IMG/VR virus record: IMGVR_UViG_3300042010_000106 | Coordinates: 124,001 to 188,000 of that record | Length of the DNA: 64,000 bases | Direction: 5' to 3' (one strand) | In this document: positions 25,938 through 52,621 of the stretch, piece by piece | How positions within the stretch are numbered: the stretch's first letter is position 1 | Layout of the letters: each line of letters starts with the position of its first letter | Made by a program: the position numbers and the translations under genes | Notes under the pieces: model-generated | What the model saw: only the letters and a program-made list of their open reading frames with translations | The model's database searches: none | Told to the model about the DNA's origin: nothing

Positions 25938-26984
25938 TTACGGTGCTGTGATACCGCCGCCAGATTTCAGTGCGACAATACGCATGCCGGTGTTATTCGG
26001 CCCGTTCGCCAGAAGCGAAACGTAATTGCGTGGTGGATCAGCTTCGTTGTAAACCTTCAGTGGAACGTCGGTGTTTTCCGAAACAACGTCACCACTGGTG
26101 TAACCGAGCAAATCCAGTTCGTAGGTGTATGCGTAACGAGTGGTGTTCAAACGCGACGGGAACGAAACCACATAGCGGTTGCCTTCGGAAATTGCTACCT
26201 GTTCCGCAATGTTGATAATTGCGTTGTTGTATTCGGTATCAATGCCCGCATCCACTGCATCGGAAGGACGCATAACGTCAGATTCACGAACGGTGAAACG
26301 TTGAATCTTTTCAGCGGTGGAAAACATTGCAAATACTGGTGCTTTACCAGTGATAACAACGGCACCGGAAACACGATCAACCGGACGCTGTGCAACAACC
26401 CACGAAACCGATTTCGCGCCGAGGTCAGAAGTGAAGTCTTCCCAAACGCACAGAACAAAACCACGTTCTGCAATGCAGAGGTAGTAGGTCATTGGTGCAG
26501 AATCGGAAATGTCAGCGGAACCGACAACTACACGCGAAGTACGGTTAATAAAACCGTCTTCTGGTTTGGTTGGATCAGGAGCTTTATCCGCTGGCGTAGT
26601 GCCTTTGGTGTAGCGACCGCCGACAACGCCGATGGGGCCAGCCAGAACCTTTGTGGTGGTGCCTGTGGTAGTCCAAGAAAGCGAACCATCGGTACGCAAA
26701 CTTTGGTTAGAACCGAGAACCATACCGGCAGTGTGCTTATCGAAAACTTCGATTTGTACGCGCCATGGTTGCTTTGCAGGAAGTGCAGGGTTATTCAACG
26801 GGTCAACCGCAATACCTGCTTCCAACATCACTTTGAATTTGGCGCGCCCGGTTGCATCTACAGGCGGAACCCAAGGCACCGGATTGATTACAGAAAAACC
26901 GTTGTCCGTAAGGTCGGCAACAACGGCGAGCATCAGTTCACCCACGTGGGTATAACCGCTGCGACGGATGGAAATTCCAGCCAT
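25938..26984 (-). CDS. Virion structural protein, tandem paralogue 1
   Basis: High similarity to 27001..28170 (PSRLNTxRYAYTYELD). Confidence 0.8.
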   Translation of the reverse strand: MAGISIRRSGYTHVGELMLAVVADLTDNGFSVINPVPWVPPVDATGRAKFKVMLEAGIAVDPLNNPALPAKQPWRVQIEVFDKHTAGMVLGSNQSLRTDGSLSWTTTGTTTKVLAGPIGVVGGRYTKGTTPADKAPDPTKPEDGFINRTSRVVVGSADISDSAPMTYYLCIAERGFVLCVWEDFTSDLGAKSVSWVVAQRPVDRVSGAVVITGKAPVFAMFSTAEKIQRFTVRESDVMRPSDAVDAGIDTEYNNAIINIAEQVAISEGNRYVVSFPSRLNTTRYAYTYELDLLGYTSGDVVSENTDVPLKVYNEADPPRNYVSLLANGPNNTGMRIVALKSGGGITAP

Positions 26985-27000
26985 GATTTATTCCCCTTGA

Positions 27001-28170
27001 TTAAGGTGCAGGAGCAGCAATGCCGCCGCCTTCTTTGAGCGCAACAATTCGCATGCCGTTGTTGTTCAGAATGTTCGCGTGCATACCAATGTATTTACGC
27101 GGAGTTTCTTCACCGTACAGAGTTTGCGGAACTTCTGTGGTGCCACCGACAACGGTTGCAGACGTGTAGCCGATCATGTCCAGTTCGTAGGTGTATGCGT
27201 AACGCGGAGTGTTCAGGCGCGACGGATAGTTAACGATGTACTGGTTGTTTTCGGAAACACCGATTTGTTTTTTGTCGTTGATGATTGCGGTTGTATCTTT
27301 GGTATCCAGAACAGCCGAAGTAATTGTGGAAGCGTCAACCAAATCGGCTTCACGAACCACGAAACGGTTGATTTGGTTGCCCACTGCGTTAACGCAAAAT
27401 ACAGGAGCTTTACCTTCAACAACAACGATGCCTGTATCGCGATGCACAGGACGTTGAACCAGAACCCACGAAAAATCTGTACCGCTTACGTTTGTGCCGG
27501 CGCCTTGCCAAATCGACAAGTAGAAACCACGTGGAGTGATTGCCAGATAGTACGACATTGGGTAGGTCGCGCTAACGTCTTTGGTTGGATCAGTCGGGAA
27601 AACTGGTGGTGTTTCGATTTGCGATTGGGAGTTACCAACAATCGAATCAACCCAAACTTTGGTACGACGGTTGATGAAACCTTCTGTTTTGTTTTTCCAA
27701 TGCGGCTGGAAAAGACCAGCATTTTGGAAATACGGTTTGTCAGCGGTTTGCGTCAAACGATACGGGGTGTAATCTTCACCGACAATCCCGCGTGCACCGA
27801 TAATACGAACGGTGGTCGTGGTGATTTCAGTAACGGAATCGGTTGTGTAAGGCAGCGAACCGTCGTTAGGCAATGCAGTCGGCGAACCTGCAAACATACC
27901 CATTGTGGCGTTGTCAGTTACGGAAAACGCAACGCGCCACGGTTGATTCGGAGTAGCGCCGGGAATCAATGGATTCAATGGGTCAACGCTTGGCCCAGCT
28001 TCCAAAGTAACGCTGAATTTTTCAGCAGTTGCGCCAACAGGTTTTACGTAGGCGCCAGTTCCATCGACAGGGAAAATGGCTTTGAAACCATTCGCCAACA
28101 TGTCGTCAATTACAGCGAGAGTGATTTTACCGGCTGTGGTAAAACCCTCTTTGCGGATTGCAATACCCAT
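27001..28170 (-). CDS. Virion structural protein, tandem paralogue 2
   Basis: High similarity to 25938..26984. Confidence 0.8.
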   Translation of the reverse strand: MGIAIRKEGFTTAGKITLAVIDDMLANGFKAIFPVDGTGAYVKPVGATAEKFSVTLEAGPSVDPLNPLIPGATPNQPWRVAFSVTDNATMGMFAGSPTALPNDGSLPYTTDSVTEITTTTVRIIGARGIVGEDYTPYRLTQTADKPYFQNAGLFQPHWKNKTEGFINRRTKVWVDSIVGNSQSQIETPPVFPTDPTKDVSATYPMSYYLAITPRGFYLSIWQGAGTNVSGTDFSWVLVQRPVHRDTGIVVVEGKAPVFCVNAVGNQINRFVVREADLVDASTITSAVLDTKDTTAIINDKKQIGVSENNQYIVNYPSRLNTPRYAYTYELDMIGYTSATVVGGTTEVPQTLYGEETPRKYIGMHANILNNNGMRIVALKEGGGIAAPAP

Positions 28171-33330: not shown

Positions 33331-35346
33331 TTAGAACGTACCGTTTGCAGTACCCGGAGGTGTAATGGTTACGCCACGCGGATTCGACAGCCGAATTTGT
33401 ACCGTTTTCTGTGGCGGATTTGGAACGTCTGTGCCGATGATCGTTACGGGGATTTGTTTCTCAGATTCGCCCGCTTCAAACATCATTGTGCCGCTCGCTG
33501 TTTCGTAATCTGGTTCGCCGAAATCGAACACCATATCGGTGAATGCAGAACTTGCTTGCGAGTAAGTGAAGAAGCCGAAATTGCAGCTTGTGTTAAACAC
33601 TGCCAAATCAGGATCGGTACTCACGTTGCAAGTAAGCGGCGTTGCGTCCAGAACATCAGAACCGAACGGCGTTGCAAACGCACGCAGAACAGGGCCGTCA
33701 CGATCAATTTTCACCGTGGAATATGCGCCCGACCATGCGTGACCAGTTGCACCGATATCAACTTCAGAAATCACTTTGATTACGACATTGTTTCTTACGT
33801 AAGAAAGTTGGAAGTTTTTCGATGTCGAACCAGCAGCCATACCACCTTGGTTACGGTTTGCAACGATCATGTGGTTTGCGCCAGCATCACGAACAAATGC
33901 CAACACCAGACCCATTGCATCGTCGTCCGCATCGGTAGAACTGAGTTTCGCTTGTGCCGAGAAGAAGTTGAAAGCATTCGGACTCAACAACGAAACGTAA
34001 TTACCGCTGTTTTTAATCGACTCAATATGATCGCCAGTCAGCACCATATTGTTCGCGTCATCGGCGGCAGGAATTTGCATACCCGGCAGATAAAGCGCTG
34101 CACCAGAAGCATGCGACCAGTTCTGATAATTGTCGTAGGTATTTGGAATCGGAATTCCTGAACCTTTCGCATCATTCGAAACGGTTTCCCAATCAACCAA
34201 ACATGTGCGTTTTGCAGCAGTGTTCAACACAAGATCATAGAACATGACGTTGGTTGTTGCAGGATCATCAGGACGCACAGCAGTTGTATCGTAAACCTGT
34301 ACAGCGGAGAACGGTTCGGTATCCAGCAAAACTACGCGCCAGTTGAAATCTACATCCGCAACCGCTTCACCAAATGTCACAGTAAACGAACCGGTTGTTG
34401 TGCCTTGATCGGTGCTAGTTGCAAGCACGTACGATTGTGCGCCGGAATATTTGTTGAAACTGATATACACGCGTGGAAGCCGTGCAGTTTCACCGTCAAA
34501 TTCATAGGTAATTGTCAGCGCTTGAACAGGCGCAACCGATTTGAATTCGCCGTAAACTTCCAACGTTGCATCATTCGTTTCGAGCGTGTGATATTCACCT
34601 ACACGCGGATCAGCATTTTGTCGCGGGTTATTTGTGAACAATGCAGAAACACCGGGCGGGCCTTGAATACCTTGACCGGGTGCGCCTGTTTCGCCTTGCG
34701 GGCCTTGTTGACCTTGCAAACCGCGTTCGCCTTGTGGGCCAGTCGGGCCTATTGGGCCATTCAAACCAGTTTCACCGATTTGACCTTGTGGGCCTGTTGC
34801 GCCTGTCAAACCTTGCAAACCTTGTGGGCCGGTTGGGCCTTGTTGTCCGGGTGTTCCTTGTGGGCCTAATTGACCTTGTGGGCCAGTCGGGCCGGTTGGG
34901 CCAATGCTACCGGGCAAGCCTTGTGCGCCTTGCGGGCCTGTAGGGCCAACGGGGCCACGCGGGCCGATACCACCATAACCACCGGCAGGGCCAGCGGGGC
35001 CGACATCACCTTTAGGGCCAATACATCCCATCGGGCCGTCGCGTCCGTCTTTGCCGTTGCGACCATTTAAACCTTGCGCACCTTCAGGGCCAGTCGGGCC
35101 AGTTGCACCAACACCAATATTATTTACTGTTGGAAAACCTTCGGAACGAATTACAGTTCCGTCAGTATTTGTAATTGTGAAAACGCCAGTTTCTTTATCG
35201 TAAACCGCAGTTTTTACGCCACCTTGTGCCGCCGTTTCGTCGGTACTCGGTTCAAATTCAACGCCCGTATCTTTCAGCACTGCGCCCGGTACAGAGCGAG
35301 ACGTGCTAATCATCGACGGTGGTACTTTTGTTAATCCGCCAGCCAT
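33331..35346 (-). CDS. Collagen-like fibre protein with Calx-beta and thrombospondin-C-like lectin domains
   Basis: 48 contiguous Gly-X-Y triplets; [26 protein letters not shown] (Calx-beta); [11 protein letters not shown]. Confidence 0.85.
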
Positions 35347-35392
35347 AAAAATATTCCTTAAAATTGCCCTCCATTTCTGAAGGGCGAATTGA

Positions 35393-38300
35393 TTAGCTCA
35401 TGCCGGAAAAATCGAGGTCAGACCATTTCCCTTTCCAGCCAGCAGCGGCAGTGCTATAAATAACCTGTCCTGCTTGGTTGTAAAGTGTGAACCAGCAATA
35501 GTTCGGATTCTTCGATTTCAGGTTGTAGCAACGAATGTGCATTTTTTGCGGGCCTGCTTCCAATGCAAACAATCCGCCAGCAGTGGAAACAGCTTGGCAG
35601 CCTACATAAACGCCGAGCTGGTCATCTGCACCGCCTACAACGTAATACAAACCATCCGCTGGAATGTTGATATCACGTTCTGCACTCCACCAATTGTAAT
35701 TCGGGCCACCACTTCCGATGCTTGGGGAAATGTGAATCACTGTGCGACCGCCGTAAAACGATTGATAAAGTGGAACACCTACAGTGCCCGCAACAACATC
35801 ACCAATTGCAGAAGCTTGTCCCGGCAGACCCGGCAACGAAACAGAAACGGCTTGACCTGCGCCATTCAAAATTGCCCAGTTACACCACGCAACGTTACCG
35901 CCTGTGTTGCGATAAATAACTGTGATTGGAACTGCACCGCCCGGATGCGCAAAAGTGAATGTATCAATATCTCGCCAGTTCGAATTTTTATCGCGAATGT
36001 GATTACAGTTGACGTAGAAACTTGCAACGTCGTCCGCAGTCCATTTAACGGTGTATGTTCCGGCTGGAAGGTTTGGTGTGTACTGCAACGAATAATTGAT
36101 TCCGTTTGGCTGGCTTCCGTTTCCGTGCAAAGAAGTCCGCACTTGTACGCTGCCATAACCAACCGTGTAGTTTGTAGAACCACCACCGCCACTTTGTTGC
36201 TTCTCAATTGTGTTGCCACTAATCAAGCAAGAAGTAGCGAATTGATTACACGTTGGTTTCACACCGCCGTTGATAATACGTCCGCGCCAATCCGCAGCAT
36301 TCGACGAATAAATAATCTGATTCGAAGGATCGAGAACACACATTGAAGCATATGCGTTCCGACGACCACCGCCCGCCGATTGATAATTGATGAACAAATG
36401 ACGTGTGCCACGATTCACCGCTGTACGCACACGGGTTGCACGTGCGACAGAACCACCACTCGACTGCGCGATCAGATTACAATCCATGTAAAGCTGTGCA
36501 CCATCTTTGCCGAAGAAAATGAACGTATAAATACCCGAAACCGGGAACGTCATTTCTCTTTCCATCACGTACGAAGCACCGCCGTAAGAAGCGAGCGCTT
36601 TTTGTACGAACATTCGGCGAGACAAACGGTTTACGAATTCACACGCGCCACCATCGTTAACCGCTACCAAAGTCGCTTGATCACACTGGTAATTGTTTTC
36701 GTTGATGATTGTTCCGATTGCCGCAGGACGTTCAGCTTTCACACCAGTCAGGTTATAAATCTCAACCTTGAACTGTACGTTCGGCCCCATCAAATCCGTG
36801 CCGCAAATTGGAACGCAAATATCAATGCCATTTTCAGAGCATGCAGGAATGTGCCCGGTGCTTTGAGTTTTGTTGTAATCGGCGCCGTAGTTCAGCGGTT
36901 CTGGTACAGGTTCCGAAGTCAGCGAGCCTGTTTTAGAACGCCATTGATATGCGGATGCGTTCGTTGCAAATACAACCTGTCCGTTTCCGAGGATCGCACA
37001 CTTAACCCAACCCGGTGTGCAATGCGGAACGTTTTGATACATGATCGAAAGTGTTTGCAGACCTTTACGACCGACAAAGTTTGTTTGCTGGTTTGCTTCC
37101 CACGTCGAAGATTTTTGCACCTTCAATTCGCAATCCAGATAGATGTAGCAGTTATCGTCCGCTGTTCCGATCCACGTATAAACGCCGTCGTAAGGCAGAT
37201 TGATTTCTGTTTCCATCACGTAATACTGACCACCTTGCGCGCAGTTGTAGCCGTGAGCTTGCGAGCAAATTCGATAAGCACCATAACCGCCAATGTTTAC
37301 GTCGTTTGTCGAGTAGGCAAATTGCACACCAGTTTCAGACAAAATGTCGCAATAAAGCGAAGGTGTAATCGAGCCGGGAATAATGCAATCACCCTGCGCT
37401 TCAATTGCATCGAGTGGCGTTGTTTTGAAACTGAAATTCACGTCACGCGGAGTGCGGTGATTCAAACGTGCGCGGAAACACAGGTAATTCACTTGACCTT
37501 TCTTCAGACGAACTTTCGAACCGTCGTCGATGATCAAACGTGCAAAAGGAACCGGGCAACTAACTGTCATTGCCCAATCAGGGCAGCACGGGCCGAGAAC
37601 ACGCACGTGAATTGTCGTACCGTTTTTCGGATAGAATTCAAAGTAGAAACGCTGGTGGCCACTTACAAATCCATCAGTACCACCGACCACGATATCATTC
37701 GGGTAGGTGCCTTGATAAAAGATCATTTGCACAGGATCAGCAGCAAAGAATTCTACGACGACATCGCCTTCTGCTTTGCCTGAATAATCGTAGTAAATGT
37801 CGTTGTATTGCGCGCCCTGTCCGACTTGTGCGTAAACAGGATCGAGCGTTGGATTCAACGGCAAACACAAAACGTCGTCCGGCACTGGCATGCAGAACAT
37901 TGGAAACACCCGGCTACCGCGTTGCTCAGGGCAGTAGATCGAATATTGCCATTTGTTGTAATTGCGTGGTGCATCGTAACGAACAATAATGAAATCATCG
38001 CCGCCGACGCTAGTGAAATTGAACGGAATGGAAATCGCCGAATATTGATTCGTACCAGAATTCAAACTGGCTGCTTGTGCAATCATTCCGCCGTTGTAAA
38101 ACACAGAAACGGTAACAGGCGCCACGCCCTGAACAGTCAGGTCAATGTGCATGATACCGTTGGCGGGAATTCGATGTACCATTTCGTAACTTGCTGCACC
38201 GGGAACAACGCGATGATCTTCATTTACGCGGCATGGCAGGTTAGGGCCAAATGTTCCGAAGCATGGTGCTGGGCGTTCATAGTTCGTCAATTGAACGACG

Positions 38301-39004
38301 TTTACTTCGCCCAATTTGATTCGCCACCGCGCATTCGCAGGAGCATCAACACGAACGGTTAGGAAATTGTTTGCAGGACGCGGAACACCGCAATCAACTT
38401 CACGCAATTCAGGTGGTTCGGCATTGTAGAAAATGTTGAAGTAATTGCCGCTGGTTTTGCTATCACCAAGCAATTCGCAACCGTGATAAATACGGAAACG
38501 AACACCGGGATCTAATTCAAGTGCGCTAACGTCAATTGCACCCGATGCAGAACCAGCCCAAACCAACATTTCATTTATTTCTGCTGTTTCACCATACAAC
38601 GTAACGGGCAATGCCTCGGCTACAGCGTTTGGCAGCAATGGTGCGGTTGCAAAGAAACGACCGCCAGCCACATCAAAATTTGGTGTGTGTCCTGTATATG
38701 TTTTCGGTGCCAATCCGTCGCAGGTTGAAACCAAATAGCCAGTTGGGCCACCGGTTTTAAATTCCCCGCTATCAAAATCTCCCGCGTAACCCGGCCAGCA
38801 TTCAACCATTTCTTCAGGTGGGCAATAGTCAACGCCGCTATCACATTCAATCGTTAACCAATATTCATTTGAACCATGGCGAACGCGCAAATCGTTAACC
38901 GGATCAATTCGAAACCACGTCCCATCATCCTGATAAACATTCCATTCACTTTCACAAATGTCCAGATTGGCATCTTGTGGAGTGCGTATGGTCAACTGAC
39001 TCAT
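35393..39004 (-). CDS. Cys-rich adhesin-like protein with Calx-beta and four PA14-like domains
   Basis: AAGGA RBS before ATG 39004; [36 protein letters not shown] repeats. Confidence 0.8.
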
Positions 39005-39031
39005 AGCAATTTCCTTCGGTTTTAATATGTT

Positions 39032-39040
39032 TAAATTACC
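39032..39040 (-). promoter_or_regulatory. GGTAATTTA candidate late promoter
   Basis: Follows a terminator hairpin; 28 nt upstream of the ATG. Confidence 0.55.
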
Positions 39041-39041
39041 G

Positions 39042-39073
39042 AAAAACAACGAAAGGGGCGCAAAGGCCCCTTT
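39042..39073 (-). terminator. Intrinsic terminator
   Basis: AAGGGGCCTTTGCGCCCCTTTCGTTGTTTTT on the minus strand. Confidence 0.7.
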
Positions 39074-39100
39074 AATTGTGTAGCTTTTTACAAACGTTTA

Positions 39101-39619
39101 TTACGGTTTCACCCACAATGTTCCGGGTTTTACGTAACTGCCTTCCGCTTGGCTTGGGTCTTCGCTTTGAATAAAGATTTGAACAAATCCGTCTTCGCCA
39201 CGTGGCCCCGGTGTTCCTTGTGGCCCCGGTGGGCCTTGAATACCTTGTGGCCCGCGTGGGCCTTCAGGGCCGACATCACCGCGAGGGCCTGCTGGGCCTT
39301 GGCAACCGGTTGGCCCTTGTTCACCATCACGACCATCTGCACCGTCAACACCATTCATTCCGCTTAAACCACGTGGGCCAGCGGGGCCTTGCACAATGCT
39401 ATTCGTTGTAAAAAATCCATCAACTTTAATGAATGTGTTATCACTCAATGTCAGTTGAAGAACGCCTGTCAATTGTTCCAAATGCCCGCTAACCAAAACA
39501 GGACTTTGTGATTCATCCTGTTCGGCAACTTGCAAACTTGTACCCGTGTTTTTCAGGTTTGCACCAACGCGACCGCGTGCACGAACCATTTCCACGGGCA
39601 CCCGTGTTAACTCACCCAT
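39101..39619 (-). CDS. Collagen-like protein (about 22 triplets)
   Basis: Gly-X-Y run; C-term [10 protein letters not shown]. Confidence 0.85.
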
Positions 39620-39631
39620 AAAAATGCTCCT

Positions 39632-40258
39632 TTAACCGCAGTTATAATCGGCGTTTGGATTTACCCAAAGCATTCCGTGCACGCGTGCTTCTTCTGCCGG
39701 TTCAACCGTTGAAACAACGATATTCATAAAACCTTCAGGGCCACGCGGGCCGGGTTTACCTTGTGGGCCTTGATCACCACGCGGGCCTTTCGGGCCTTGT
39801 GGCCCTTGTGGGCCGGTGGGGCCTATTGGGCCTTGCAAACCTGTTGGGCCGACAGGGCCAGTTGGGCCGATTGGCCCCGGTTGACCAGTGCGACCGGTTT
39901 CACCTTTCGGGCCTGTTTGTCCAATTGCACCTTGAGGGCCAGCACAACCGGGGCCACCGGCTGCACCATCGCGACCATCTTTTCCAATTTTCCCATCCTT
40001 TCCCGCTAAACCTTGTGGCCCCGTAGGGCCTGCTGGAATTTTGTCTGGAGTAGGAAAACCCGAAGTGCGAATTTCTTGGCCGTTCGCGAAACGCAGAGTT
40101 AAAACACCCTGCGAAGCGTCGAACAACATTGAAGCAACTTCTGAAACTTCCGTATCTTTCGGCGAAGTGGCGGCAAGTCGTTCGTTCTTAACTTCAAGAA
40201 CGCTCGAATCTTTTTCACCCTTTGCACGAATCATCGGCGTTGGGATTTTCGTTAGCAT
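39632..40258 (-). CDS. Collagen-like protein (about 33 triplets)
   Basis: Gly-X-Y run; C-term VEP..GMLWVNP. Confidence 0.85.
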
Positions 40259-40270
40259 TTCTGCATTCCT

Positions 40271-42757
40271 TTAGACTTTGTACTTAACCGTGTACGATTC
40301 GCTCAGCGTTCCGCCTTGCAGTGCTGTGTCTTCCTTCTTACGAATCAGCCAATCACGTTCGCCTGTACCGTCATCGTAACGAACAGTAAGAATTTCAGGA
40401 AGATTTGGATCGTATTCAGGGTAGTCCGGGCCGTTAGGGATAATGTCATTACGCAACGCAACACCTTTCCACGTAACAGGAAGGTCTAAAGGCAACACAC
40501 GCAATTCAACGTCTGGCCCTGCGCGCTTATCCCACATCAAATAGATGTAATCGTCTGCTGGTGCAACCGTATCTATTTGAATAGTCGTCGTGCTATTTGG
40601 GACGATTGTGTTTGTCATTACCTTATCGGCAAAGTCCTGAATGCCTGTCCAACGCGTGTAAGGTTTTCCGTATGGTGTTATGTTCGAATTCACGCCGTAA
40701 TCGCGTTCTTCTTGCGTAATTTCCGATTCAATCGGGCCACCAGTGAACAAACGGTTAGCAAACATTGCAACGCCCCAACGCGCAGGACGAATAGGAACTT
40801 CAGTCACTGGCATACACACACCGTCGTAAACTTTCTCTGACGTTGTTGTGGTGCCATCGCTCCATTCTGTGACTGTCCAAGACGCTGTGACAAACGTATC
40901 ACCGCCCGGAACACCACCACTCGTTTGACCCGGTTGGCAATTCACTACTTCAGTAAATGGCGTAACTGTTACAGGTACGATCGGTGTTGCACAATACACT
41001 TTGATTTTAAATGTTCCTGTGCCAGAACTAACAGCACGCAGGCCATCAACTGTACGCAGAATCAATTCAAAATTTTCAGTGGCCGTGGACGTTTTGACAG
41101 TGGTGTTACCCACACGCCACGCAATGGAAACGGAACCGGTTATTTCTACTTCGAATTTCACGTGACCGCGAATGTTTGGAATCGCAAAATCTACGATTAC
41201 GCTATCGCCGCCGTTGAATTGTGTCAGTGGATCGTTGCACGGCAAATGGTTGATTGCCGGACATGTCGCGTTAATCGTCAACTGTTGGTCAGTTGTTAAC
41301 GAAACGATTTTAACCACGCCAGTGCCTGCGTAAAAGAACGTGATGTTTTGGCCCATGCCTTGGAGAACACCGTCTCGATATACAGATACGTCGAGGTTTG
41401 TTGTAATCGTTGTATTTCCCGGCGAGCTGCCGTAACGAACGACCGTATTTGAGAAACTATCAACTGTTTTTTGAGTGCCACAATCCATTACCTCTTCGGT
41501 CGGAATTCGTACCGGGCAAGATGCGCGCATACGGTAATCATTGCCGCGACTTTTGATCACGAAAGAAACGTCTTTATCTACAGCGAATTCGTACGAACCG
41601 GATTCAGTAATTGTTTGAACCACTGTGTGTTCGACAGTTACAGGCGTTCCAGTTAACACGATATCCAGAATCGTCGTGCCATTTACGCCGCCCATGTCGA
41701 GCGTAACGTTTGACCAGCCGGGGAATGTTTCGAGTGTTGTTCCGCAGCTATCCAAAACGTCAGTCGGATCAGGATCGGGCGCGTTGTACGGGCATTTCAC
41801 TTTGACGCTGATTGCACCGTAACCCGTGGTTTCAATTGTCACTTTCCCTTTATCGGGATCGAAGTCATACGAGAATGTCACAGTGCCCGCGTGATTCGAA
41901 AGGACGTAAAAAGGAACGTTGTTTTGACGGAATTCAACACGCACCGTTTCAACTAGCGTTACTTCAATATCAATCGTACCAATTTCTACAGGCAGTTTAA
42001 CTTCCACGCTGCGCGGTGCTTCGTACGCGTATGGTTCTGCACCACACGTGAATTCATACACCGGAACTTCTGGATCAACTGGAATGTATGGGCAAGTGAA
42101 AATGTAATCGACAGAGCCGGTGCCCTGCGTGGTTGCATAAACATCGCCCAATGCCGGATCGTAGAAAAAACTAAACGTTCCGTCACGGTTGGAAGTAATC
42201 GTTTTCAGCAAAGTTTTGTCTTGGAAGAAACGAACTTCTGCTGTGCCAATCACTTCCCAAATAACTTCAACAAAACCCGGTTCATCGCCGAGCAAAATTG
42301 TGTTCTTTTTTACGTATCCTGCTTGGTGCCATTGCTTCCCGCATTTGATCGACGTTTCTTGCAGCGGTGGCGGCTTAACGTTGTTGGGAAGACACAAACT
42401 TTCAGGACAATCCACACGGACATGCACGCGACTGTTAACGCTGTTGCCTTCGTGCGTGATAATGATTTCGTCATTACCGGGTTTTTTATCCAGTGGCGCA
42501 TATTGAAACGTGAACGAACCAACGGCATCGTCCAACGGCGCAGCGGCCACAATTTCATCGAATTGGTGAACGTATAAAGCGTCTTCCGGCGTGTCCCGTT
42601 CATACCAAATAACAACGGGGGCCTGAATCGTTCCCAAAAATAATGAAACTGAGTGCTTTCCCTTACCGCAAAACGTAATCCATTTGCCGCATTCAGCAAT
42701 TGTTTTCGCTACGGGTACGGGGGATTTCGCTACGACTGGAATAGTCGTACAAAGCAT
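40271..42757 (-). CDS. Structural protein with about six Cys-bracketed beta-sandwich repeats
   Basis: Repeats begin xCG and end xCP. Confidence 0.75.
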   Translation of the reverse strand: MLCTTIPVVAKSPVPVAKTIAECGKWITFCGKGKHSVSLFLGTIQAPVVIWYERDTPEDALYVHQFDEIVAAAPLDDAVGSFTFQYAPLDKKPGNDEIIITHEGNSVNSRVHVRVDCPESLCLPNNVKPPPLQETSIKCGKQWHQAGYVKKNTILLGDEPGFVEVIWEVIGTAEVRFFQDKTLLKTITSNRDGTFSFFYDPALGDVYATTQGTGSVDYIFTCPYIPVDPEVPVYEFTCGAEPYAYEAPRSVEVKLPVEIGTIDIEVTLVETVRVEFRQNNVPFYVLSNHAGTVTFSYDFDPDKGKVTIETTGYGAISVKVKCPYNAPDPDPTDVLDSCGTTLETFPGWSNVTLDMGGVNGTTILDIVLTGTPVTVEHTVVQTITESGSYEFAVDKDVSFVIKSRGNDYRMRASCPVRIPTEEVMDCGTQKTVDSFSNTVVRYGSSPGNTTITTNLDVSVYRDGVLQGMGQNITFFYAGTGVVKIVSLTTDQQLTINATCPAINHLPCNDPLTQFNGGDSVIVDFAIPNIRGHVKFEVEITGSVSIAWRVGNTTVKTSTATENFELILRTVDGLRAVSSGTGTFKIKVYCATPIVPVTVTPFTEVVNCQPGQTSGGVPGGDTFVTASWTVTEWSDGTTTTSEKVYDGVCMPVTEVPIRPARWGVAMFANRLFTGGPIESEITQEERDYGVNSNITPYGKPYTRWTGIQDFADKVMTNTIVPNSTTTIQIDTVAPADDYIYLMWDKRAGPDVELRVLPLDLPVTWKGVALRNDIIPNGPDYPEYDPNLPEILTVRYDDGTGERDWLIRKKEDTALQGGTLSESYTVKYKV

Positions 42758-42767
42758 TCAATTCCCC

Positions 42768-43565
42768 TTATGCAAAAATAACAAGTTTCCTGACGTACTC
42801 AGGATAAACTTCGTTCGGACGAATTGGGCAAACACAATCTTCAGCAGCGGCCCAAATCAATTCATCCGGTTGAGGATGTTCTAACAGGGAAACTTCTTTC
42901 TTCATTGTCATGCCTTCAGGGCCGCACGGGCCTTGGCTTGTGGTTGGGCAACTAGGGCCGCACAAACCGCGTTTGCCTTCGAATCCGGGAGGGCCAGCGG
43001 GGCCACGATCACCACGCGGGCCGGTAGGGCCTAATGGCCCGAACATTCCTTGCTGACCTACAGGGCCTTCAATACCGAAATCGCCCATTGGCCCCGGACG
43101 ACCTTCTGCACCATTTGGCCCCGCGCAACCTGTTACACCGTCCGCACCGTCGCGACCGTCTACGCCGTCTTCTTGATCTTTTCCAGAATCACCGCGTGGG
43201 CCTTGTGGGCCAACACCGAAATCTATTTGCCGGAGAAAACTAGAAGCAGTAATTACTTCACCATTCTTTCGAACTATTGTGAAAAGCCCTTTGTCATTGT
43301 CGAAACTGCATTCAGCAATTTGGCGACTTTCACGATCCAAAGGCTTATCGAAATAAACTTCGTCAATGTTCGAACGATACGCCTGTTCACCATCGTAGCC
43401 GGGGGCTTCAATGAGTTGATACGTAGGCGCTTTTAGTTCTTCGCCAGTCTGTGCGGCTTGCACGACTTTTGAGTTCTGTTTCTTTGTGTTCGTAAATACC
43501 GTGCGGCCAATTGGAACCGTCACAGAGTTATTGTCTAACTGCGCAATCGTTAGGGCGTTTGACAT
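42768..43565 (-). CDS. Collagen-like protein (about 29 triplets, Cys-rich C-terminus)
   Basis: Gly-X-Y run with one Q-for-G break. Confidence 0.85.
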   Translation of the reverse strand: MSNALTIAQLDNNSVTVPIGRTVFTNTKKQNSKVVQAAQTGEELKAPTYQLIEAPGYDGEQAYRSNIDEVYFDKPLDRESRQIAECSFDNDKGLFTIVRKNGEVITASSFLRQIDFGVGPQGPRGDSGKDQEDGVDGRDGADGVTGCAGPNGAEGRPGPMGDFGIEGPVGQQGMFGPLGPTGPRGDRGPAGPPGFEGKRGLCGPSCPTTSQGPCGPEGMTMKKEVSLLEHPQPDELIWAAAEDCVCPIRPNEVYPEYVRKLVIFA

Positions 43566-43972
43566 AGATACCCCTCAATCTCTTCAGGTGTTCGCGCACT
43601 GTTTATGCCGCTACGTTTGTATGCGAATAACCGATTCCTTTCGGTCACTTTATCAATCATTTGTTTCTGACTGAGAACGCACGGATACCCACTACGTGTT
43701 ATGTACGTGGCACTCAAGTAGCCGAGTTCATCGTCATAATATTTCACGTTGTTGTGCACGATATAATCAACGTTAACCAATTTCGATAATGCTGTTGCGC
43801 GAAACGCAGGCATGTCGATTGTGATATGCAGTTGATTATCCCGTACAAAAATATCCAGTAATTCGTAGTTGTCACGGCAGTGCGCGAAGGTAGCTTCGTC
43901 GAGTGGAAATGCACGGCCTTCTGGCTCAACGTTTCCTGAAACGAGTCCTCTACCTTCGACGTACCAGTACAT
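43550..43972 (-). CDS. Possible tail-fibre assembly chaperone
   Basis: C-term KRSGINSARTPEEIE resembles fibre-assembly proteins; located next to fibre genes. Confidence 0.45.
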   Translation of the reverse strand: MYWYVEGRGLVSGNVEPEGRAFPLDEATFAHCRDNYELLDIFVRDNQLHITIDMPAFRATALSKLVNVDYIVHNNVKYYDDELGYLSATYITRSGYPCVLSQKQMIDKVTERNRLFAYKRSGINSARTPEEIEGYLCQTP

Positions 43973-46275
43973 TATTTCGGAATCTCAAGTGCGTTAAAAT
44001 TGAGTGTCAGCAATGACGTGAACTGCGAAGTGTTTGCGTTGTTAATCCGCATTTTTGCAACCAGTTCCACATAACCTGTGTTGTGGTTCGACGGATCAAG
44101 TTCAAACATTTGCGTCATGCTGGCGTTGGCATAACCAATTGTGGATTTCGATTGCGAGCCAGTGAACAAACCGGCTGTATTCGTACCACGAATTGCACGA
44201 CCAAAATCAGGCTCTTTCGATTGTGAAGAACGAATCCCCACAACGTATTCCATGTTTTCCGCGCCTTCTGTTGAAACGTAACCCGGCCCGAGTTTCGCGG
44301 CGAAGTCACAAGTCACAAAAATGATGCACGGTTTCGTCAGGTCGATTCGTTGGGTAACGATAATCGTGGCCTGATTCTTTTCAATCTGGTCGATACTCCA
44401 TTTCGTGAACACTGGCGCATTCGGGAAACTTGCGGCGTCAATGCTGATTAGAGCTTGGCCGCTGGACGCATCAATTTGCAGACCTTTACCAACGCTGATT
44501 GCTGGCGCTGGAATTGGAAGCATTACAGCCGGTGCACCGTGGCGCAGCAATGTGATGTTTTTATTCGTCACATAGCCGTCAATAACAATGCCGTTCAAAC
44601 CAGTTGCTTCACTACCCTGCGCTTGAATGTTTTCGAAGATCATTACTTCCACTTCGACGCCTTTTTCAAGCGACTCCGTGAACACCAGACCGTCTTCAAT
44701 CAAAGAGTAGTTTTCTTGGTGTACATGCGCACCAGATTGCGAAACAAATACCTGTTCGATGCTTTGCGGTGTGGTCGGCAACTTCAGGAAGAACGTATCG
44801 CTATCGGTGTTATACAGGCGTGTCACAATCCGCGTGCTGTAGCCGGTATCGTTAACGTATGTCAGACAACGGAATTCAATTGGCAGACCCGCAGCCGGTG
44901 GAGAAATGAAACGAATCTTTTTGGTGATTGCGTCAAACGTGTACGTGGAAACTGGTTGCAGCATGCTCGAAATAAATGCGAAAACATGCGCGGCGCTATC
45001 GACTGCGAAACCGATATCGAATTCAACTGTTTCACCATCGCCAACTGCGTCAATGGTTTTGAACAGTACACGTGTGCCAGTCGAGGGCGAGCGCGTGAAC
45101 ACACGCAAATCAACTGGAATGGTGGACGGCAAAACTTCGGCGAATTCCAATTCAGAACCGTTCAATTCGAAAGCTGTACGGTGCTGCGTTGCCATACCGA
45201 GTGCAGGGTAAATATAGTTTGCGTTTTCCGCAATCAATTCACCGGTGCTGTAACGAGATTGATCACCAGTACCCATAAACGTCAGAGCATTTACTTCAAG
45301 GCGAGTCGGTTTCGTGTACAGCGTTGCAATGATTTTCGATGCTGCTTTCGGCGGTTGCCATGTACCTGTTCCGTCAGGGCCGGGAGTTAATACCCAATCG
45401 TTCGGAATGTTATCGGTAGGTGGCAAACCAGCGCCCGGTGCGCCCGAACCTGTAGAAGTTCCAACCATGCGCCATACAGCAATTGTGCATGTTTGCAGAT
45501 TCGGAATCGGTTGGTTATCAACGTCGCGGAATTCAGCCGCAGCAGTGTTGTAGCGATAACGCCGCGTTTTACCTTCACCGCTACCGGAAACAACGTGAAC
45601 AATTACCTGTTCGTTCGCTGCCCACGATTGGTTAGGGATTTTGAAAGATGTTGCAGTGGCCGACGTTGGAACACCGTTAAAGACGCGTTGGTGTTCGCTA
45701 AAAGCCCATTGAAACGCACCAGCCCCGTAACGCTGAGCGAGTACAGGGCCGTTTGTTCCATCAAAGTGACGCATACCATTCAGAACAGAAATGGCATTGA
45801 ATTCGGAGTTACCCGGTGGTGGCAGACGATACAAAAACGGCGTGGCCGGAATCGAATCATGCTCGCCGATAATCACACTGATTGTAGTCAGGTCGGCGCG
45901 ACTTGTACCGAGAACGACGCTCAAACGCAGCGGTTCATCAGGTTGCAGAATGTATGGCTTTGCAAATACACAACGTGCAAAAGCAATGTTGCCTTCGAAG
46001 AAAATCACCACTTCTTTAACAGTGGTTGGCCCCGCCAGCGAACGGGTATCAACACTCAATACAAAGCGAGCTGTTTTAGCGCTCAAAACTTCGACGTGGT
46101 GAATCTCGCCACCGGTTACGAAATTTCCGACAATGTTCGTGTGCTGTGTGGACGACGGATAAAGGTCTGAATCGCCCATGCGAAAACTTGCAGGGTTAAT
46201 TAAAAGCCCGCCAGCATTCGCATTGTTAATTGCGGATTCGCCCGCATCAAGTAATACCAGCTTATCAACCATCAC
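43972..46275 (-). CDS. Tail-collar/fibre attachment protein
   Basis: N-term LLDAGESAI..FRMGD..VKEVVIF resembles the fibre-attachment domain; GDG..F/VxxQ..Y repeats. Confidence 0.65.
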   Translation of the reverse strand: MMVDKLVLLDAGESAINNANAGGLLINPASFRMGDSDLYPSSTQHTNIVGNFVTGGEIHHVEVLSAKTARFVLSVDTRSLAGPTTVKEVVIFFEGNIAFARCVFAKPYILQPDEPLRLSVVLGTSRADLTTISVIIGEHDSIPATPFLYRLPPPGNSEFNAISVLNGMRHFDGTNGPVLAQRYGAGAFQWAFSEHQRVFNGVPTSATATSFKIPNQSWAANEQVIVHVVSGSGEGKTRRYRYNTAAAEFRDVDNQPIPNLQTCTIAVWRMVGTSTGSGAPGAGLPPTDNIPNDWVLTPGPDGTGTWQPPKAASKIIATLYTKPTRLEVNALTFMGTGDQSRYSTGELIAENANYIYPALGMATQHRTAFELNGSELEFAEVLPSTIPVDLRVFTRSPSTGTRVLFKTIDAVGDGETVEFDIGFAVDSAAHVFAFISSMLQPVSTYTFDAITKKIRFISPPAAGLPIEFRCLTYVNDTGYSTRIVTRLYNTDSDTFFLKLPTTPQSIEQVFVSQSGAHVHQENYSLIEDGLVFTESLEKGVEVEVMIFENIQAQGSEATGLNGIVIDGYVTNKNITLLRHGAPAVMLPIPAPAISVGKGLQIDASSGQALISIDAASFPNAPVFTKWSIDQIEKNQATIIVTQRIDLTKPCIIFVTCDFAAKLGPGYVSTEGAENMEYVVGIRSSQSKEPDFGRAIRGTNTAGLFTGSQSKSTIGYANASMTQMFELDPSNHNTGYVELVAKMRINNANTSQFTSLLTLNFNALEIPK

Positions 46276-51000: not shown

Positions 51001-51168
51001 AAAGATTGCCGGTGTGCTTGCCTTGATATCGCGAATTTCTTGCAGTTCTTTCAGCGGGGCGCGCACGTCCTGTGTGTAGAATTCTTCCAACGCATGCAGA
51101 AAAGATCCCCACAAAGGTTCCTGACGAATGAACTCTACGTCCAAATCGTCAAATGTGATTCTATTCAT
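48025..51168 (-). CDS. Baseplate wedge protein with tandem Ig-like repeats
   Basis: GGAG RBS before ATG 51168; about seven LxIxG..YxATAxYSxG..PxW repeats; N-term LWT/YKTTH..APIN wedge motifs. Confidence 0.75.
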   Translation of the reverse strand: MNRITFDDLDVEFIRQEPLWGSFLHALEEFYTQDVRAPLKELQEIRDIKASTPAIFVQQALQDMGITIPQDMIVEPERLFNSVYMIPLLHQVLGLESAYRAISFVLGRRVVVRDLYTEDYADFYETPFGALRIDGGTWYKTTHIVLEMQKVADDQEMSLPEGTTLKDRFLSAFYQLAPINIVVDQFFFLIEVENTEDFGIYGFVYKQPVRRLIADPEYVFENVDMHIVGPDEIDNNESADFGVMTAKGAVAVVSKWTTSHPQQVVFNGNTISFSGFDTDTLVTINATVKGLIYTKNVTVRRGMVDVSLVEIHGPDSLKGGEAGDYMLIAHTADGAVEIKGDIKVTSPYASMIGGQLVVKTLPSNQEAGLYVEIKIGGVKYVGAKLVKLIWVDPNTHLTGFVIGGDTDLEESSHYPFTATAFYSDNTSAQVLAVWETNSPAVIVDNGDVYTKIVHGVTDVEIKATHSYRGLTMTAYKDVKVSPKFLTVAALEILGPQELLEEQKGQYTCIATFSNGQKTVITPAWFTTAYSISENGLLNTGLVMDFLDIEIRATFEDQIVVYPVTVRRAPVVLQSLMVSGQNTVREGTAAQYDAYVQYSNGNVLKVEPTWDLETPVDWATIVDGELVVSNPQDSTVSVLAKYDVSGRTISQAKTVVVVGASNNITGLFITGANEVNSRERIILTATAVYEDGSFATVNPVWEVYTEDANAEFIAADVAGYGVIQGRSVDEDMKVIVKATYFQEVAEYPITVKYVMQKGPDVPVSSRIIGNAVMYSTQIASFSQAILFKQCTAELLVSSDWTVDNEDVRVDENGFVTALVNGDITFVLTAVWSCGGYTVTDSMVVTVIPLDAQYIGLGIIGVDTINLGETQRFSAEVYTSDVGINPGQGKIVTAQWQVLTDLNNVQIGDNGDLRVGGPVVNQTITLAATYTVDNERVEGTKQIRVLGSSPFYGDAPLNVPIDNLFASQLMIVNNTITENFEEYGWLVYPAVFGPAKVLSNGSEGDWQGNTESGDPQVIRRETNGISFDWYVYRTKTAALGPKVYEVVFS

Positions 51169-52621
51169 CAGAACGCTCCGAAATAACGGTGTCAATTTGC
51201 GGTGCAGATTGCAGAGCGCAATAAGTCGTCGGGTCATCCAGCACAACCGACGTTTCCAACGGACTCAAAACTTCTACGTAATCGACGCCTTCAACCTGAC
51301 ATGCTTTCCAGATATCCGACTTGGAAATACGGCGCTTCAGAACACCCGGACGCTTCTTGAAAAGCTTCAGAATATTCTCGTTAATCTGCGCTTTGATTTC
51401 CCCTTCCTTGTGTGCAGCCCAACCGAAGATCGCAATGGAAACACGCACGTAAACGAATACCTTTTCAGCGTTCCACGTTTGGATTTCAAGACGGTCATGC
51501 AGTTGTGGGTGAATCCATTCGCGGAATTGTTCCCACGTTGCAGACTTCGGATTAGGATTGCGGGAACCCCACGTGTCTGTCTTTTCAGGCAGCACGCAAA
51601 GACGCGTTGTGTTCATCCAAGTTTTGTCGTCTGGCGCGATATCACGTTGGCCTAATACAGCACAGTCAGCCACACCCGGATAACCGAGAATTGCAGCGCG
51701 AATTTCTTCACCAGAAATCTTTTTGTTGCGACTGCGAAACATCACAGGGCCGTACTGGCGATAATACGAAGCTTCTTTCTGTGCAGCGCCGCCCGTGGTG
51801 GTTTCAGCCGTTTGGCCTTGCACCAATGGATAATCGACATAAACGGTTTTAACACCGGTCAGAATGTCGTTGTGCAAATCGCCTTCAGAGTAAATATAAC
51901 GAACTGTCAGCGTGGCTTTGCGTGGCAGTGCAGCACCATAATTCCCGTCACCGAAAATCAACGACGCATCGCCATTTGCAGTGGTGCCGTGGAAGAACAC
52001 ACGATCATCTGCATTGCTTTCGAAAAGGCCGTCCGTGGTTGGGTGCCATTCGGTTACGTTGCCAGTGTTTTTGTCGGTTGTGTAAACCAGCAAATCAGAG
52101 GTAACGACGAAACCCGGCTCGCCCAAAATGAATTCGAAAAGCGCGGTGTTTGCAATCAAATCAAGGTCGAATGTTTTGGTGCGCACTTCACCTTGCAGCA
52201 TGTCAGCAGCAGTCGTGCCACCGGGCGTAACGAAATACTGTTTCGGGTTGTAGAAACTTACGCTATCCACTTTGTGCTGCGAATACGGCGGAACAAAAAT
52301 CGTGGTCGGATAATTGTTGTTCATGTTGACGGTACAGGCAGCAGATTTGCGGCGCTCAAGGAAAATGCCTTGGCCGCGTGCGATTGCAAAGATTGCAGAA
52401 TCGCGACGTGCTGTTTTGTAGAAGGCGTTCCGTGCACTCACTTGAATATTATGCTGGTGCCCGATTGCCATACCGGCAAAAATACGTTTGATGAACGCGC
52501 CAACCGTAGTCGGCAGCATGTCATTCCAAGTACCTTCTTCGCGCAGCTTTTCATCGAAATGTTGAGCCGCTTCGCTGAGGTCGGAAATCGTTATTGGGAA
52601 TTCTTCACGCATCGAATTCAT
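51161..52621 (-). CDS. Baseplate wedge subunit (T4 gp6/baseplate-J-like)
   Basis: TARRDSAIFAIA, LIFGDGNYG..P, TVRYIYSEG, TTGGA. Confidence 0.85.
   Translation of the reverse strand: MNSMREEFPITISDLSEAAQHFDEKLREEGTWNDMLPTTVGAFIKRIFAGMAIGHQHNIQVSARNAFYKTARRDSAIFAIARGQGIFLERRKSAACTVNMNNNYPTTIFVPPYSQHKVDSVSFYNPKQYFVTPGGTTAADMLQGEVRTKTFDLDLIANTALFEFILGEPGFVVTSDLLVYTTDKNTGNVTEWHPTTDGLFESNADDRVFFHGTTANGDASLIFGDGNYGAALPRKATLTVRYIYSEGDLHNDILTGVKTVYVDYPLVQGQTAETTTGGAAQKEASYYRQYGPVMFRSRNKKISGEEIRAAILGYPGVADCAVLGQRDIAPDDKTWMNTTRLCVLPEKTDTWGSRNPNPKSATWEQFREWIHPQLHDRLEIQTWNAEKVFVYVRVSIAIFGWAAHKEGEIKAQINENILKLFKKRPGVLKRRISKSDIWKACQVEGVDYVEVLSPLETSVVLDDPTTYCALQSAPQIDTVISERSDE

What the first reader, a model, noticed from the sequence alone, without database searches (positions are those of the whole stretch)
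33331..43565. Four collagen paralogues with a Cys at the same position, the tenth Gly-X-Y triplet
Seen: genes 33331, 39101, 39632 and 42768 have about 48, 22, 33 and 29 triplets. Each helix is preceded by a homologous beta domain (e.g. D..GVxTL..G..I...GF.T). Each has a charged GxD GRD patch and a Gly-Cys-Y as triplet 10 (GCI, GCQ, GCA, GCA). Three also share an N-terminal LT[KR][VI]PxxM[IV] peptide. Inference: either a register-locking cysteine ring that allows homo- or heterotrimeric collagen, reminiscent of animal collagen cystine knots, or a set of interchangeable fibres of graded length that dock at a common site.
Basis: partly seen in the sequence, partly recalled or inferred. Interest (0 to 1): 0.65.

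Follow-up and report, generated by a model that had tools for sequence, protein, structure and literature searches.

The report
Jumbo-phage collagen fibres, fixed cysteine
Four collagen-like tail-fibre genes of a 312-kb "hairy" jumbo phage keep an outward-facing cysteine exactly ten Gly-X-Y triplets from the start of the helix, a position conserved across the whole phage lineage that most likely ties fibres to each other or to the baseplate rather than locking one helix internally.

Summary
The window belongs to a complete 312,325-bp jumbo phage of the Lu11/PaBG/Y3 "hairy myovirus" lineage. Its baseplate-fibre module holds the genome's only four collagen paralogues. They share an N-terminal peptide, a small beta domain and a proline-poor, charged stalk of ten triplets that ends in Gly-Cys-Y. 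This Cys is present in 98 of 99 such genes in 26 related phages and in 122 of 124 metagenomic homologues. It is the only invariant non-glycine residue of the module. TGT and TGC are used equally. Cys is otherwise very rare at X in collagen-like proteins (0.06%). Triplet numbers are also fixed: 23, 34 and 29 in three types, variable only in the fibre with a lectin-like head. A built triple helix puts same-level X side chains 8.4 Å apart, pointing outward, so an internal locking ring is unlikely. A second Cys at triplet 20 occurs in both the 29- and 34-triplet types or in neither (28 of 28 phages, at least four independent switches). That points to coupling between fibres. I favour lateral bridging or docking. 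A heterotrimer and a transient folding disulfide remain rivals. Whether a disulfide forms is untested.

The parts
33331..35346 (-). g1: long collagen fibre, 671 aa. N-peptide and beta domain (aa 1-79), about 49 triplets (aa 80-226), then a 440-aa beta-sandwich head.
   Evidence: The head model has pLDDT 88.9. Foldseek matches concanavalin-A-like lectin and GH43 C-terminal sandwiches. Weak Calx-beta hit.
35023..35025 (-). g1 Cys108 codon (TGT), X position of triplet 10.
39101..39619 (-). g2: shortest fibre, 172 aa. N-module, 23 triplets and a 26-aa C-terminal cap ending L-W-V-K-P.
   Evidence: Homotrimer model ipSAE 0.50 against a best control of 0.00. 23 triplets in 26 of 26 phages.
39302..39304 (-). 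g2 Cys106 codon (TGC), X position of triplet 10.
   Evidence: Replaced by Phe or Pro in three relatives.
39632..40258 (-). g3: 208 aa. N-module, 34 triplets, the same cap motif, and a Cys near the C-terminus.
   Evidence: 34 triplets in 24 of 26 phages, and the cap at offset 103 in 26 of 26.
39944..39946 (-). g3 Cys105 codon (TGT), X position of triplet 10.
42768..43565 (-). g4: 265 aa. A 46-aa extra N-terminus, a diverged N-peptide, the beta domain, 29 triplets (Gly replaced by Gln at triplet 5), and a Cys-rich C-terminal part.
43125..43127 (-). g4 Cys147 codon (TGC), X position of triplet 10.
42948..42950 (-). g4 Cys206: a Cys in the Gly position directly after triplet 29, where the regular helix ends.
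   Evidence: Present in 26 of 26 g4-type genes.
43972..46275 (-). p767: conserved fibre-module protein immediately upstream. Candidate scaffold or socket, used here as the phylogenetic marker.
   Evidence: phrog_21488 full length. 32-66% identical in 64 jumbo phages. Trees. No invariant Cys.
43550..43972 (-). p140: small, poorly conserved protein always found just upstream of g4.
40271..42757 (-). p828: protein between g4 and g3 (Lu11 subgroup only) made of tandem Cys-bracketed repeats.
35393..39049 (-). p1218: giant Cys-rich (38 Cys) protein with a PA14-like domain, between g2 and g1.
51161..52621 (-). Baseplate wedge subunit gene that opens the module.
   Evidence: phrog_219, E = 8e-59.

Best explanation
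The four genes encode trimeric collagen-like fibres of the baseplate periphery of a Lu11/PaBG/Y3-type jumbo myovirus. All four use one attachment module: an N-terminal peptide, a small trimeric beta domain, and a proline-poor, charged stalk of exactly ten triplets. The Cys at X of triplet 10 lies on the outer surface of the helix, about 86 Å from the beta domain (10 triplets x 8.6 Å). That distance is one full supercoil turn of a 10/3 helix. I propose the Cys is an external contact point that fixes neighbouring molecules in axial register. Most likely it forms a disulfide, after lysis, to a Cys at the same height on an adjacent fibre, or to a baseplate protein. Otherwise it is a thiol or hydrophobic contact in a partner's pocket. 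The 34-triplet (g3) and 29-triplet (g4) types are an equal-length, co-evolving pair that run side by side. In many relatives they carry a second such site ten triplets further on. g2 is a short strut of invariant length. g1 is the variable, lectin-headed, probable receptor-binding fibre. What is shown: paralogy, conservation, fixed lengths, the outward geometry and the covariation. What is inferred: the lateral bridging, the disulfide chemistry, virion location and copy number.
For: Genome context: the genes lie between the baseplate wedge and sheath-like genes. Synteny is conserved in Lu11, HRDY3, PaBG, Yoloswag and NCTB. Conservation of Cys10: 98 of 99 module genes in 26 phages and 122 of 124 metagenomic homologues. 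It is the only invariant non-Gly column. Both codons are used. Background Cys at X is 0.06%. There are no indels between the beta domain and the Cys in any gene, even where a Gly is replaced in g4. Geometry: X-position C-beta lies at radius 5.07 Å. The same-level interchain C-beta distance is 8.4 Å, too far for an internal bond. Two helices about 14 Å apart could be bridged. Covariation: Cys at triplet 20 is present in both g4 and g3 or in neither, in 26 of 26 phages plus L046 and L053, and never in g2 or g1. The label needs 5 changes on the p767 tree, at least 4 of them on well-supported branches. Four of 4 independent contrasts are concordant. g3 and g4 have the same residue count from helix start to C-cap. 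Dispensability for folding: outgroup L055 has the same module without Cys. g2 lost the Cys three times (to Phe, Phe and Pro) while its neighbours kept theirs. Disulfide plausibility: neighbouring fibre-module proteins are unusually Cys-rich, with domain-bracketing Cys pairs. Trimer: the g2 homotrimer model scores ipSAE 0.50 against a best control of 0.00. In the calibration 21 of 30 solved pairs and 0 of 23 single chains reached the mark. The runs agree in at least 82% of contacts and pLDDT is about 70.
Against: No structure or proteomics shows where these proteins sit or whether the Cys is oxidised. The published PaBG virion gel bands did not include them. The sign test on the covariation is underpowered (p = 0.125 with 4 contrasts). 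g4 and g3 are neighbouring genes, so co-inheritance as a block could inflate concordance, although the gene trees do not show a single origin. Phage assembly takes place in a reducing cytoplasm. No invariant partner Cys was found in p767. A trimer offers three Cys per level, so the pairing stoichiometry is unclear. Cys to Phe in two g2 genes fits a non-covalent contact better than a disulfide.
Confidence: 0.45

Rival explanations
1. Non-covalent docking motif only. The Cys, together with the upstream K/R-D patch, is a surface residue recognised by a common adaptor or socket protein, as exposed hydrophobic residues are in collagen-binding motifs. No disulfide ever forms.
For: Cys is replaced by Phe in two g2-type genes. 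A conserved block spans triplets 5-12 around the Cys in g2 orthologues. The residue faces outward. No invariant partner Cys was found in p767. Assembly is cytoplasmic.
Against: Cys is an unusual choice for a purely hydrophobic contact and is kept in 98-99% of genes, although Phe or Pro is tolerated. The second site at triplet 20 is again Cys, in two different paralogues. The neighbouring proteins look disulfide-stabilised.
Confidence: 0.2
2. The g3 and g4 chains co-assemble into one heterotrimeric triple helix. The Cys at a given triplet must then be present in every chain to complete a functional ring.
For: g3 and g4 have the same residue count from helix start to C-cap (cap offset 103 against 103-106). 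The Cys at triplet 20 co-varies perfectly. The Gly replacements in g4 (triplets 5-8 and 30) would be easier to accommodate if only one or two chains carried them. The genes are adjacent in most relatives.
Against: g4 has a diverged N-peptide, an extra N-terminal extension and different C-terminal domains. In the Lu11 subgroup the genes are separated by a 2.5-kb gene. The closely related g2 is predicted to homotrimerise.
Confidence: 0.15
3. Intra-trimer register lock or folding aid. The three Cys form a transient or permanent interchain disulfide during assembly, like the 'cysteine annulus' of the P22 tailspike or the cystine knots of animal collagens.
For: There is a ring of three Cys at one level of a trimeric phage fibre. 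The P22 tailspike uses transient disulfides without native disulfides (PMC3357383). The Cys lies in the least proline-rich part of the helix, where stabilisation would help.
Against: The C-beta to C-beta distance is 8.4 Å in a regular helix. Three Cys is an odd number. Outgroup L055 folds the same module without Cys. g2 can lose the Cys. This idea does not explain why two different paralogues gain and lose the triplet-20 Cys together.
Confidence: 0.12
4. No special function. The Cys is an ancestral residue kept by phylogenetic inertia.
For: All carriers belong to one phage lineage. Paralogues share ancestry.
Against: The module is only 31-60% identical among sequences, yet this is its only invariant non-Gly residue. 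Synonymous codons are mixed. The spacing is indel-free. A second Cys recurs at exactly +10 triplets.
Confidence: 0.03

Closest known systems
Collagen-like tail-fibre proteins of prophages and phages, such as EHEC prophage EPclA-D (PMC3368898)
   Same: A trimeric Gly-X-Y stalk between an N-terminal phage-attachment domain and a small C-terminal trimerising domain. They are annotated as tail fibres and occur as several paralogues per genome.
   Different: EPcl collagen lengths vary by multiples of three, and these proteins have a coiled-coil segment. Here three lengths are invariant, there is no coiled coil, the beta domain differs, and an exposed Cys is fixed at triplet 10.
Staphylococcus phage 80alpha FibU (gp68), collagen-like upper baseplate fibre (PMC7048315; PDB 6V8I)
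   Same: An accessory collagen-like fibre that radiates from the baseplate. There is a weak profile match to the junction region (E = 3e-5).
   Different: FibU has a BppU-type Ig-like N-domain, and its collagen part is unresolved in the map. There is no match with the beta domain alone. No conserved Cys has been described.
C1q, collectins and adiponectin: 'bouquets' of collagen stalks tied by N-terminal cysteines (from general knowledge)
   Same: Several triple helices are held side by side, in register, by inter-helix disulfides near the N-terminus, with globular heads at the far end. This is the working analogy for the mechanism I propose.
   Different: Their Cys lie in the non-collagen N-terminal segment, not inside the helix. 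They are secreted through an oxidising pathway. There is no homology beyond the Gly-X-Y repeat.
Cystine knots of animal collagens (type III C-terminus, FACIT COL1/NC1 junction) (from general knowledge)
   Same: Cys are associated with the end of a triple helix and covalently fix the chains.
   Different: The knots use two close Cys per chain at the C-terminal helix end. The triplet-10 Cys is single, N-proximal and outward-facing. Only the C-terminal Cys cluster of g4 (Cys at Y of triplet 28 and in the Gly position after triplet 29) resembles a knot.
P22 tailspike C-terminal 'cysteine annulus' (PMC3357383)
   Same: A ring of cysteines in a trimeric phage adhesin assembled in the cytoplasm, involved in chain alignment.
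   Different: That ring is in a beta-helix and caudal-fin domain, not in collagen. Its disulfides are transient. No paralogue covariation is known.

Membership tests
Collagen triple-helix repeat proteins (Pfam PF01391) / phage collagen-like tail fibres | Uninterrupted Gly-X-Y repeats long enough to form a triple helix | tested here: met
   23-49 triplets. PF01391 E-values run from 5.8e-11 to 4.5e-20, above the gathering score.
Collagen triple-helix repeat proteins (Pfam PF01391) / phage collagen-like tail fibres | Trimeric assembly | tested here: met
   The model supports a g2 homotrimer: ipSAE 0.50 against a best control of 0.00. In the calibration 21 of 30 solved pairs and 0 of 23 single chains reached the mark. 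This is a prediction, not a measurement.
Collagen triple-helix repeat proteins (Pfam PF01391) / phage collagen-like tail fibres | Encoded in the tail/baseplate module and related to annotated tail fibres | tested here: met
   phrog_8745 tail fiber, E from 1e-28 to 1e-53. The genes lie between the baseplate wedge and sheath-like genes. Synteny is conserved in five named phages.
Collagen triple-helix repeat proteins (Pfam PF01391) / phage collagen-like tail fibres | Physical presence in the virion | not testable with these tools
   The 14 PaBG gel bands identified by MALDI did not include these proteins. No proteome of this phage is available.
Collagen cystine knot (type III / FACIT type) | Two closely spaced Cys per chain at the C-terminal end of the helix | tested here: not met
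   The triplet-10 site is one Cys per chain, at X, 10 triplets from the N-terminal end. Only the C-terminal end of g4 has a C-x3-C arrangement.
Collagen cystine knot (type III / FACIT type) | Geometry that allows interchain disulfides within one helix | tested here: not met
   C-beta to C-beta distances are 8.4 and 11.5 Å in a helix that reproduces the known rise and twist.
C1q/collectin-like laterally cross-linked collagen bundles | Cys-mediated links between separate triple helices held in register | tested here: inconclusive
   The Cys faces outward and the spacing from the N-domain is identical in all paralogues. The g3 and g4 second Cys co-vary. There is no direct evidence of a bond.
P22-type cysteine annulus (transient folding disulfide) | Cys reactive only in folding intermediates and required for productive trimerisation | not testable with these tools
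   This needs refolding and alkylation experiments. The Cys-free outgroup L055 argues against necessity.

The most novel reading that the evidence does not exclude
Exposed cysteines spaced every ten triplets (levels 10 and 20, and 30 in g4) stitch different collagen triple helices together. The result would be a covalently cross-linked, in-register collagen bundle or cage around the baseplate of the 'hairy' jumbo myoviruses. That would be a viral, cytoplasm-assembled counterpart of the C1q/collectin bouquet, with fibre lengths used as fixed rulers. It might also be the molecular basis of the unexplained hairs of this lineage.
Probability: 0.25. Interest if true: 0.75.

Novelty: new variant of a known kind. 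Interest (0 to 1): 0.6.

Why it matters
Collagen-like phage fibres are usually treated as floppy spacers of arbitrary length. In this lineage three of the four paralogues keep an exact triplet count. All four keep a surface Cys at an exact distance from the anchor, and two paralogues gain and lose a second site together. Collagen therefore seems to be used here as a precise structural ruler with defined cross-link or contact points. The proteins that make the 'hairs' and peripheral baseplate of the Lu11/PaBG/Y3 lineage are still unknown (PMC6143709; the 2026 review PMC13282480 reports nothing further). These genes give concrete, testable candidates. The site would also be a natural design rule for register-specific bundling of recombinant bacterial collagens.

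Tried and rejected
1. The profile search of 1.84 billion representatives with the whole N-module was swamped by generic collagens. It was useful only for showing that the beta-hairpin motif occurs in unrelated collagen proteins without the Cys.
2. PDB sequence searches found nothing with the C-terminal cap or with the beta domain alone. An idea that the cap resembles the T4 fibritin foldon rests only on a hairpin motif I recalled from memory and is not supported by any search.
3. The 80alpha FibU hit covers a part that is not resolved in the map.
4. I looked for a partner Cys. p767 has no invariant Cys. One p767 column has Cys in 8 of 10 phages with the triplet-20 Cys and in 1 of 16 without, but the independent contrasts are weak. 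It is kept only as a lead.
5. The proximal stalks show no clear charge complementarity between paralogue types.
6. Pfam on the longer g3- and g4-type relatives found no intein or other domain, despite 'intein' notes in GenBank records.
7. Literature searches found no paper that links PaBG, Lu11 or Y3 to collagen or to this Cys. One search was wasted on a word-start match to 'fibulin'.
8. The first two DNA searches failed on a service error.
9. The alignment of p140, the small protein upstream of g4, is too poor to fold.

Full report
WHAT THE WINDOW IS. The window is bases 124001-188000 of a complete 312,325-bp virus record with direct terminal repeats. Its proteins are 66-76% identical to those of Pseudomonas phages Lu11 and HRDY3. 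They are 32-47% identical to those of PaBG, phage NCTB, and the Erwinia and Dickeya jumbo phages Y3, Yoloswag and AD1. This lineage has been called the second lineage of 'hairy Myoviridae'. The proteins that make its hairs are unknown, and its 'tail fiber' genes have been named as candidates (PMC6143709). A 2026 review adds nothing further. The finding lies in a long minus-strand operon. It starts at a baseplate wedge gene (51161-52621, phrog_219) and runs into two sheath-like genes (25938-28170).

THE OBSERVATION. All four ORFs are real, and each has a significant Pfam Collagen match. The Gly-X-Y counts are 49, 23, 34 and 29. The fourth gene has Gln in place of Gly at triplet 5. In each gene the X residue of triplet 10 is Cys. 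An alignment of the four with 14 distant homologues gives 37% mean column identity. It confirms the shared N-terminal peptide, the small beta domain and the charged patch. The Cys is the only invariant residue of the module that is not Gly. A search of the whole genome finds exactly these four paralogues.

CONSERVATION. The same four genes, in the same order, occur in Lu11, HRDY3, PaBG, Yoloswag and NCTB, and each has Cys at triplet 10. Among metagenomic homologues of three of the types, 122 of 124 have the Cys. The two exceptions are g2-type genes with Phe, and their neighbouring g3-type genes keep Cys. In 26 distinct phage loci fetched around the conserved upstream gene p767, 98 of 99 module genes have the Cys. 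The exception is again a g2-type gene, this time with Pro. TGT and TGC are used 14:14, and they differ between orthologues. In 282 unrelated collagen-like proteins, Cys occupies X in 0.06% of triplets. There is never an insertion or deletion between the beta domain and the Cys. This holds even in g4-type genes, where a Gly in triplets 5-8 is often replaced. A more distant phage (L055; p767 30% identical) has five paralogues with the same N-peptide, beta domain and K/R-D patch but no Cys. The Cys is therefore a derived addition to a module that works without it.

FIXED LENGTHS. The g2-type has 23 triplets in 26 of 26 phages. The g3-type has 34 in 24 of 26, and its cap starts at residue offset 103 in 26 of 26. 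The g4-type has 29 regular triplets followed in 26 of 26 by a Cys in the Gly position. Where g4 has a canonical cap, the cap sits at offset 103-106, so g4 has the same overall residue count as g3. Only the g1-type varies: 24-31 triplets in PaBG-like phages and 44-49 in the Lu11 group. g2 and g3 share a roughly 26-aa C-terminal cap. In some relatives g3 carries extra C-terminal domains. The 440-residue head of g1 folds confidently (pLDDT 88.9). It resembles concanavalin-A-like lectin sandwiches and has a Calx-beta-like end. That fits a carbohydrate-binding distal tip.

GEOMETRY. I built a collagen chain from standard backbone torsions, recalled from memory for the Pro-Pro-Gly peptide. The model reproduces the known rise (8.68 Å per triplet), twist (52.6 degrees) and glycine radius. 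This check is what I rely on. X-position C-beta atoms lie 5.07 Å from the axis and point outward. Same-triplet X residues of neighbouring chains are 8.4 Å apart at C-beta, and the third pair is 11.5 Å apart. A disulfide needs about 4 Å, so a locking ring inside a regular helix is not feasible. Two parallel helices about 14 Å apart could be bridged. Ten triplets is about 86 Å. In the 10/3 description of proline-poor collagen this is one full turn of each chain (established helix geometry; inference). The proximal ten triplets hold only about 2.8 Pro in 20 X/Y positions. The g2 homotrimer prediction passed its controls: ipSAE 0.50 against a best control of 0.00. In the calibration, 21 of 30 solved pairs and 0 of 23 single chains reached the mark. 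The runs agree in at least 82% of contacts and pLDDT is about 70. The interface covers the helix, the beta domain and the cap.

COVARIATION BETWEEN PARALOGUES. A subset of relatives carries a second Cys at X of triplet 20, exactly ten triplets further along. In all 26 phages, and in two more from metagenomes, it is present in both the g4-type and the g3-type or in neither. It never occurs in g2 or g1. On a tree of p767 the joint state needs five changes, at least four of them on well-supported branches. Four of four independent contrasts go the same way. The sign test cannot go below p = 0.125 with so few contrasts. Trees of the g3 and g4 N-modules are weakly resolved but congruent. NCTB, which lacks the second Cys, is sister to L038, which has it in both genes. 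A single transferred cassette therefore does not explain the pattern. An internal lock in each homotrimer gives no reason for two different proteins to change together. Contact between g3 and g4, a shared partner, or a mixed trimer would each explain it.

CONTEXT FOR DISULFIDES. Within the module, p1218 (3.1% Cys), p828 (2.1%) and g4 (2.6%) are much richer in Cys than the other tail proteins (0.3-1.0%). p828 consists of tandem repeats of about 85 residues, each opening with x-C-G and closing with x-C-P. All 17 of its Cys are invariant in Lu11 and HRDY3. This pattern is typical of disulfide-clasped extracellular domains (inference). It makes oxidation of the released virion plausible, but it has not been shown.

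VERDICT. The best reading is that the triplet-10 Cys is an outward-facing bridging or docking point that sets the axial register between fibres, or between fibre and baseplate. g3 and g4 form a coupled, equal-length pair. g2 is a fixed strut. g1 is the variable receptor-binding fibre. My confidence is 0.45, and the disulfide chemistry itself is less certain. The rivals are a purely non-covalent docking residue (0.2), a g3/g4 heterotrimer (0.15), a transient or permanent intra-trimer lock (0.12) and inertia (0.03). Collagen-like phage fibres are a known kind (PMC3368898; PMC7048315). The fixed exposed Cys, the 10-triplet periodicity, the invariant triplet counts and the paralogue covariation were not found described in the searched library. 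I therefore rate this a new variant of a known kind.

Noticed in passing
window 40271-42757 (-): The 828-aa protein between g4 and g3 is built of six to seven tandem repeats of about 85 residues. Each repeat is bracketed by a Cys (x-C-G at the start, x-C-P at the end). All 17 Cys are invariant in Lu11 and HRDY3. The gene is absent from PaBG-like relatives, where g4 carries a long C-terminal domain instead.
   Followed up: partly
window 42948-42950 (-) and 42954-42956 (-): g4-type proteins have an invariant Cys in the Gly position directly after triplet 29 (26 of 26 phages). In the Lu11 subgroup there is also a Cys at Y of triplet 28. Together they form a C-x3-C at the helix end that resembles a collagen cystine knot more closely than the triplet-10 Cys does.
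   Followed up: partly
window 35393-39049 (-): This 1218-aa protein has 38 Cys (3.1%) and a PA14-like domain. Two Cys columns are invariant across five phages.
   Followed up: partly
L055:8000-14000: A distant phage on a 364-kb contig carries five collagen paralogues with the same N-peptide, beta domain and K/R-D patch but no Cys at triplet 10 and different triplet counts (51, 45, 29, 29, 29). It is a natural Cys-free comparison.
   Followed up: partly
window 43972-46275 (-), residue about 125 (the R-A-D-L-T stretch): The aligned column of p767 is Cys in 8 of 10 phages that have the triplet-20 Cys and in 1 of 16 that lack it. The independent contrasts are too few to say more.
   Followed up: partly
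L037:13900-15100 (= L051): One relative has a fifth paralogue, a duplicated g3-like gene (33 and 34 triplets). Both copies have Cys at triplet 10.
   Followed up: no
L039:10001-13228: The p767 homologue of this phage is 1084 aa, about 300 aa longer than all the others. It may hold an inserted element. GenBank records of relatives mention inteins in this module.
   Followed up: no
window 25938-26984 and 27001-28170 (-): Two adjacent paralogues (348 and 389 aa) both match the same 'tail sheath' PHROG (phrog_12249) over their full length.
   Followed up: no
P0147, P0205, P0228 (unrelated collagen-like proteins): The short beta-hairpin motif (D..G.LT...NG...) that precedes the helix here also sits between collagen segments in unrelated long collagen-like proteins. 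It seems to be a widespread collagen-flanking mini-domain with no solved structure.
   Followed up: partly
window 53372-55159 (+): A 595-aa thymidylate-synthase-like protein. The family match starts only at residue 191, so it has an unexplained N-terminal extension.
   Followed up: no
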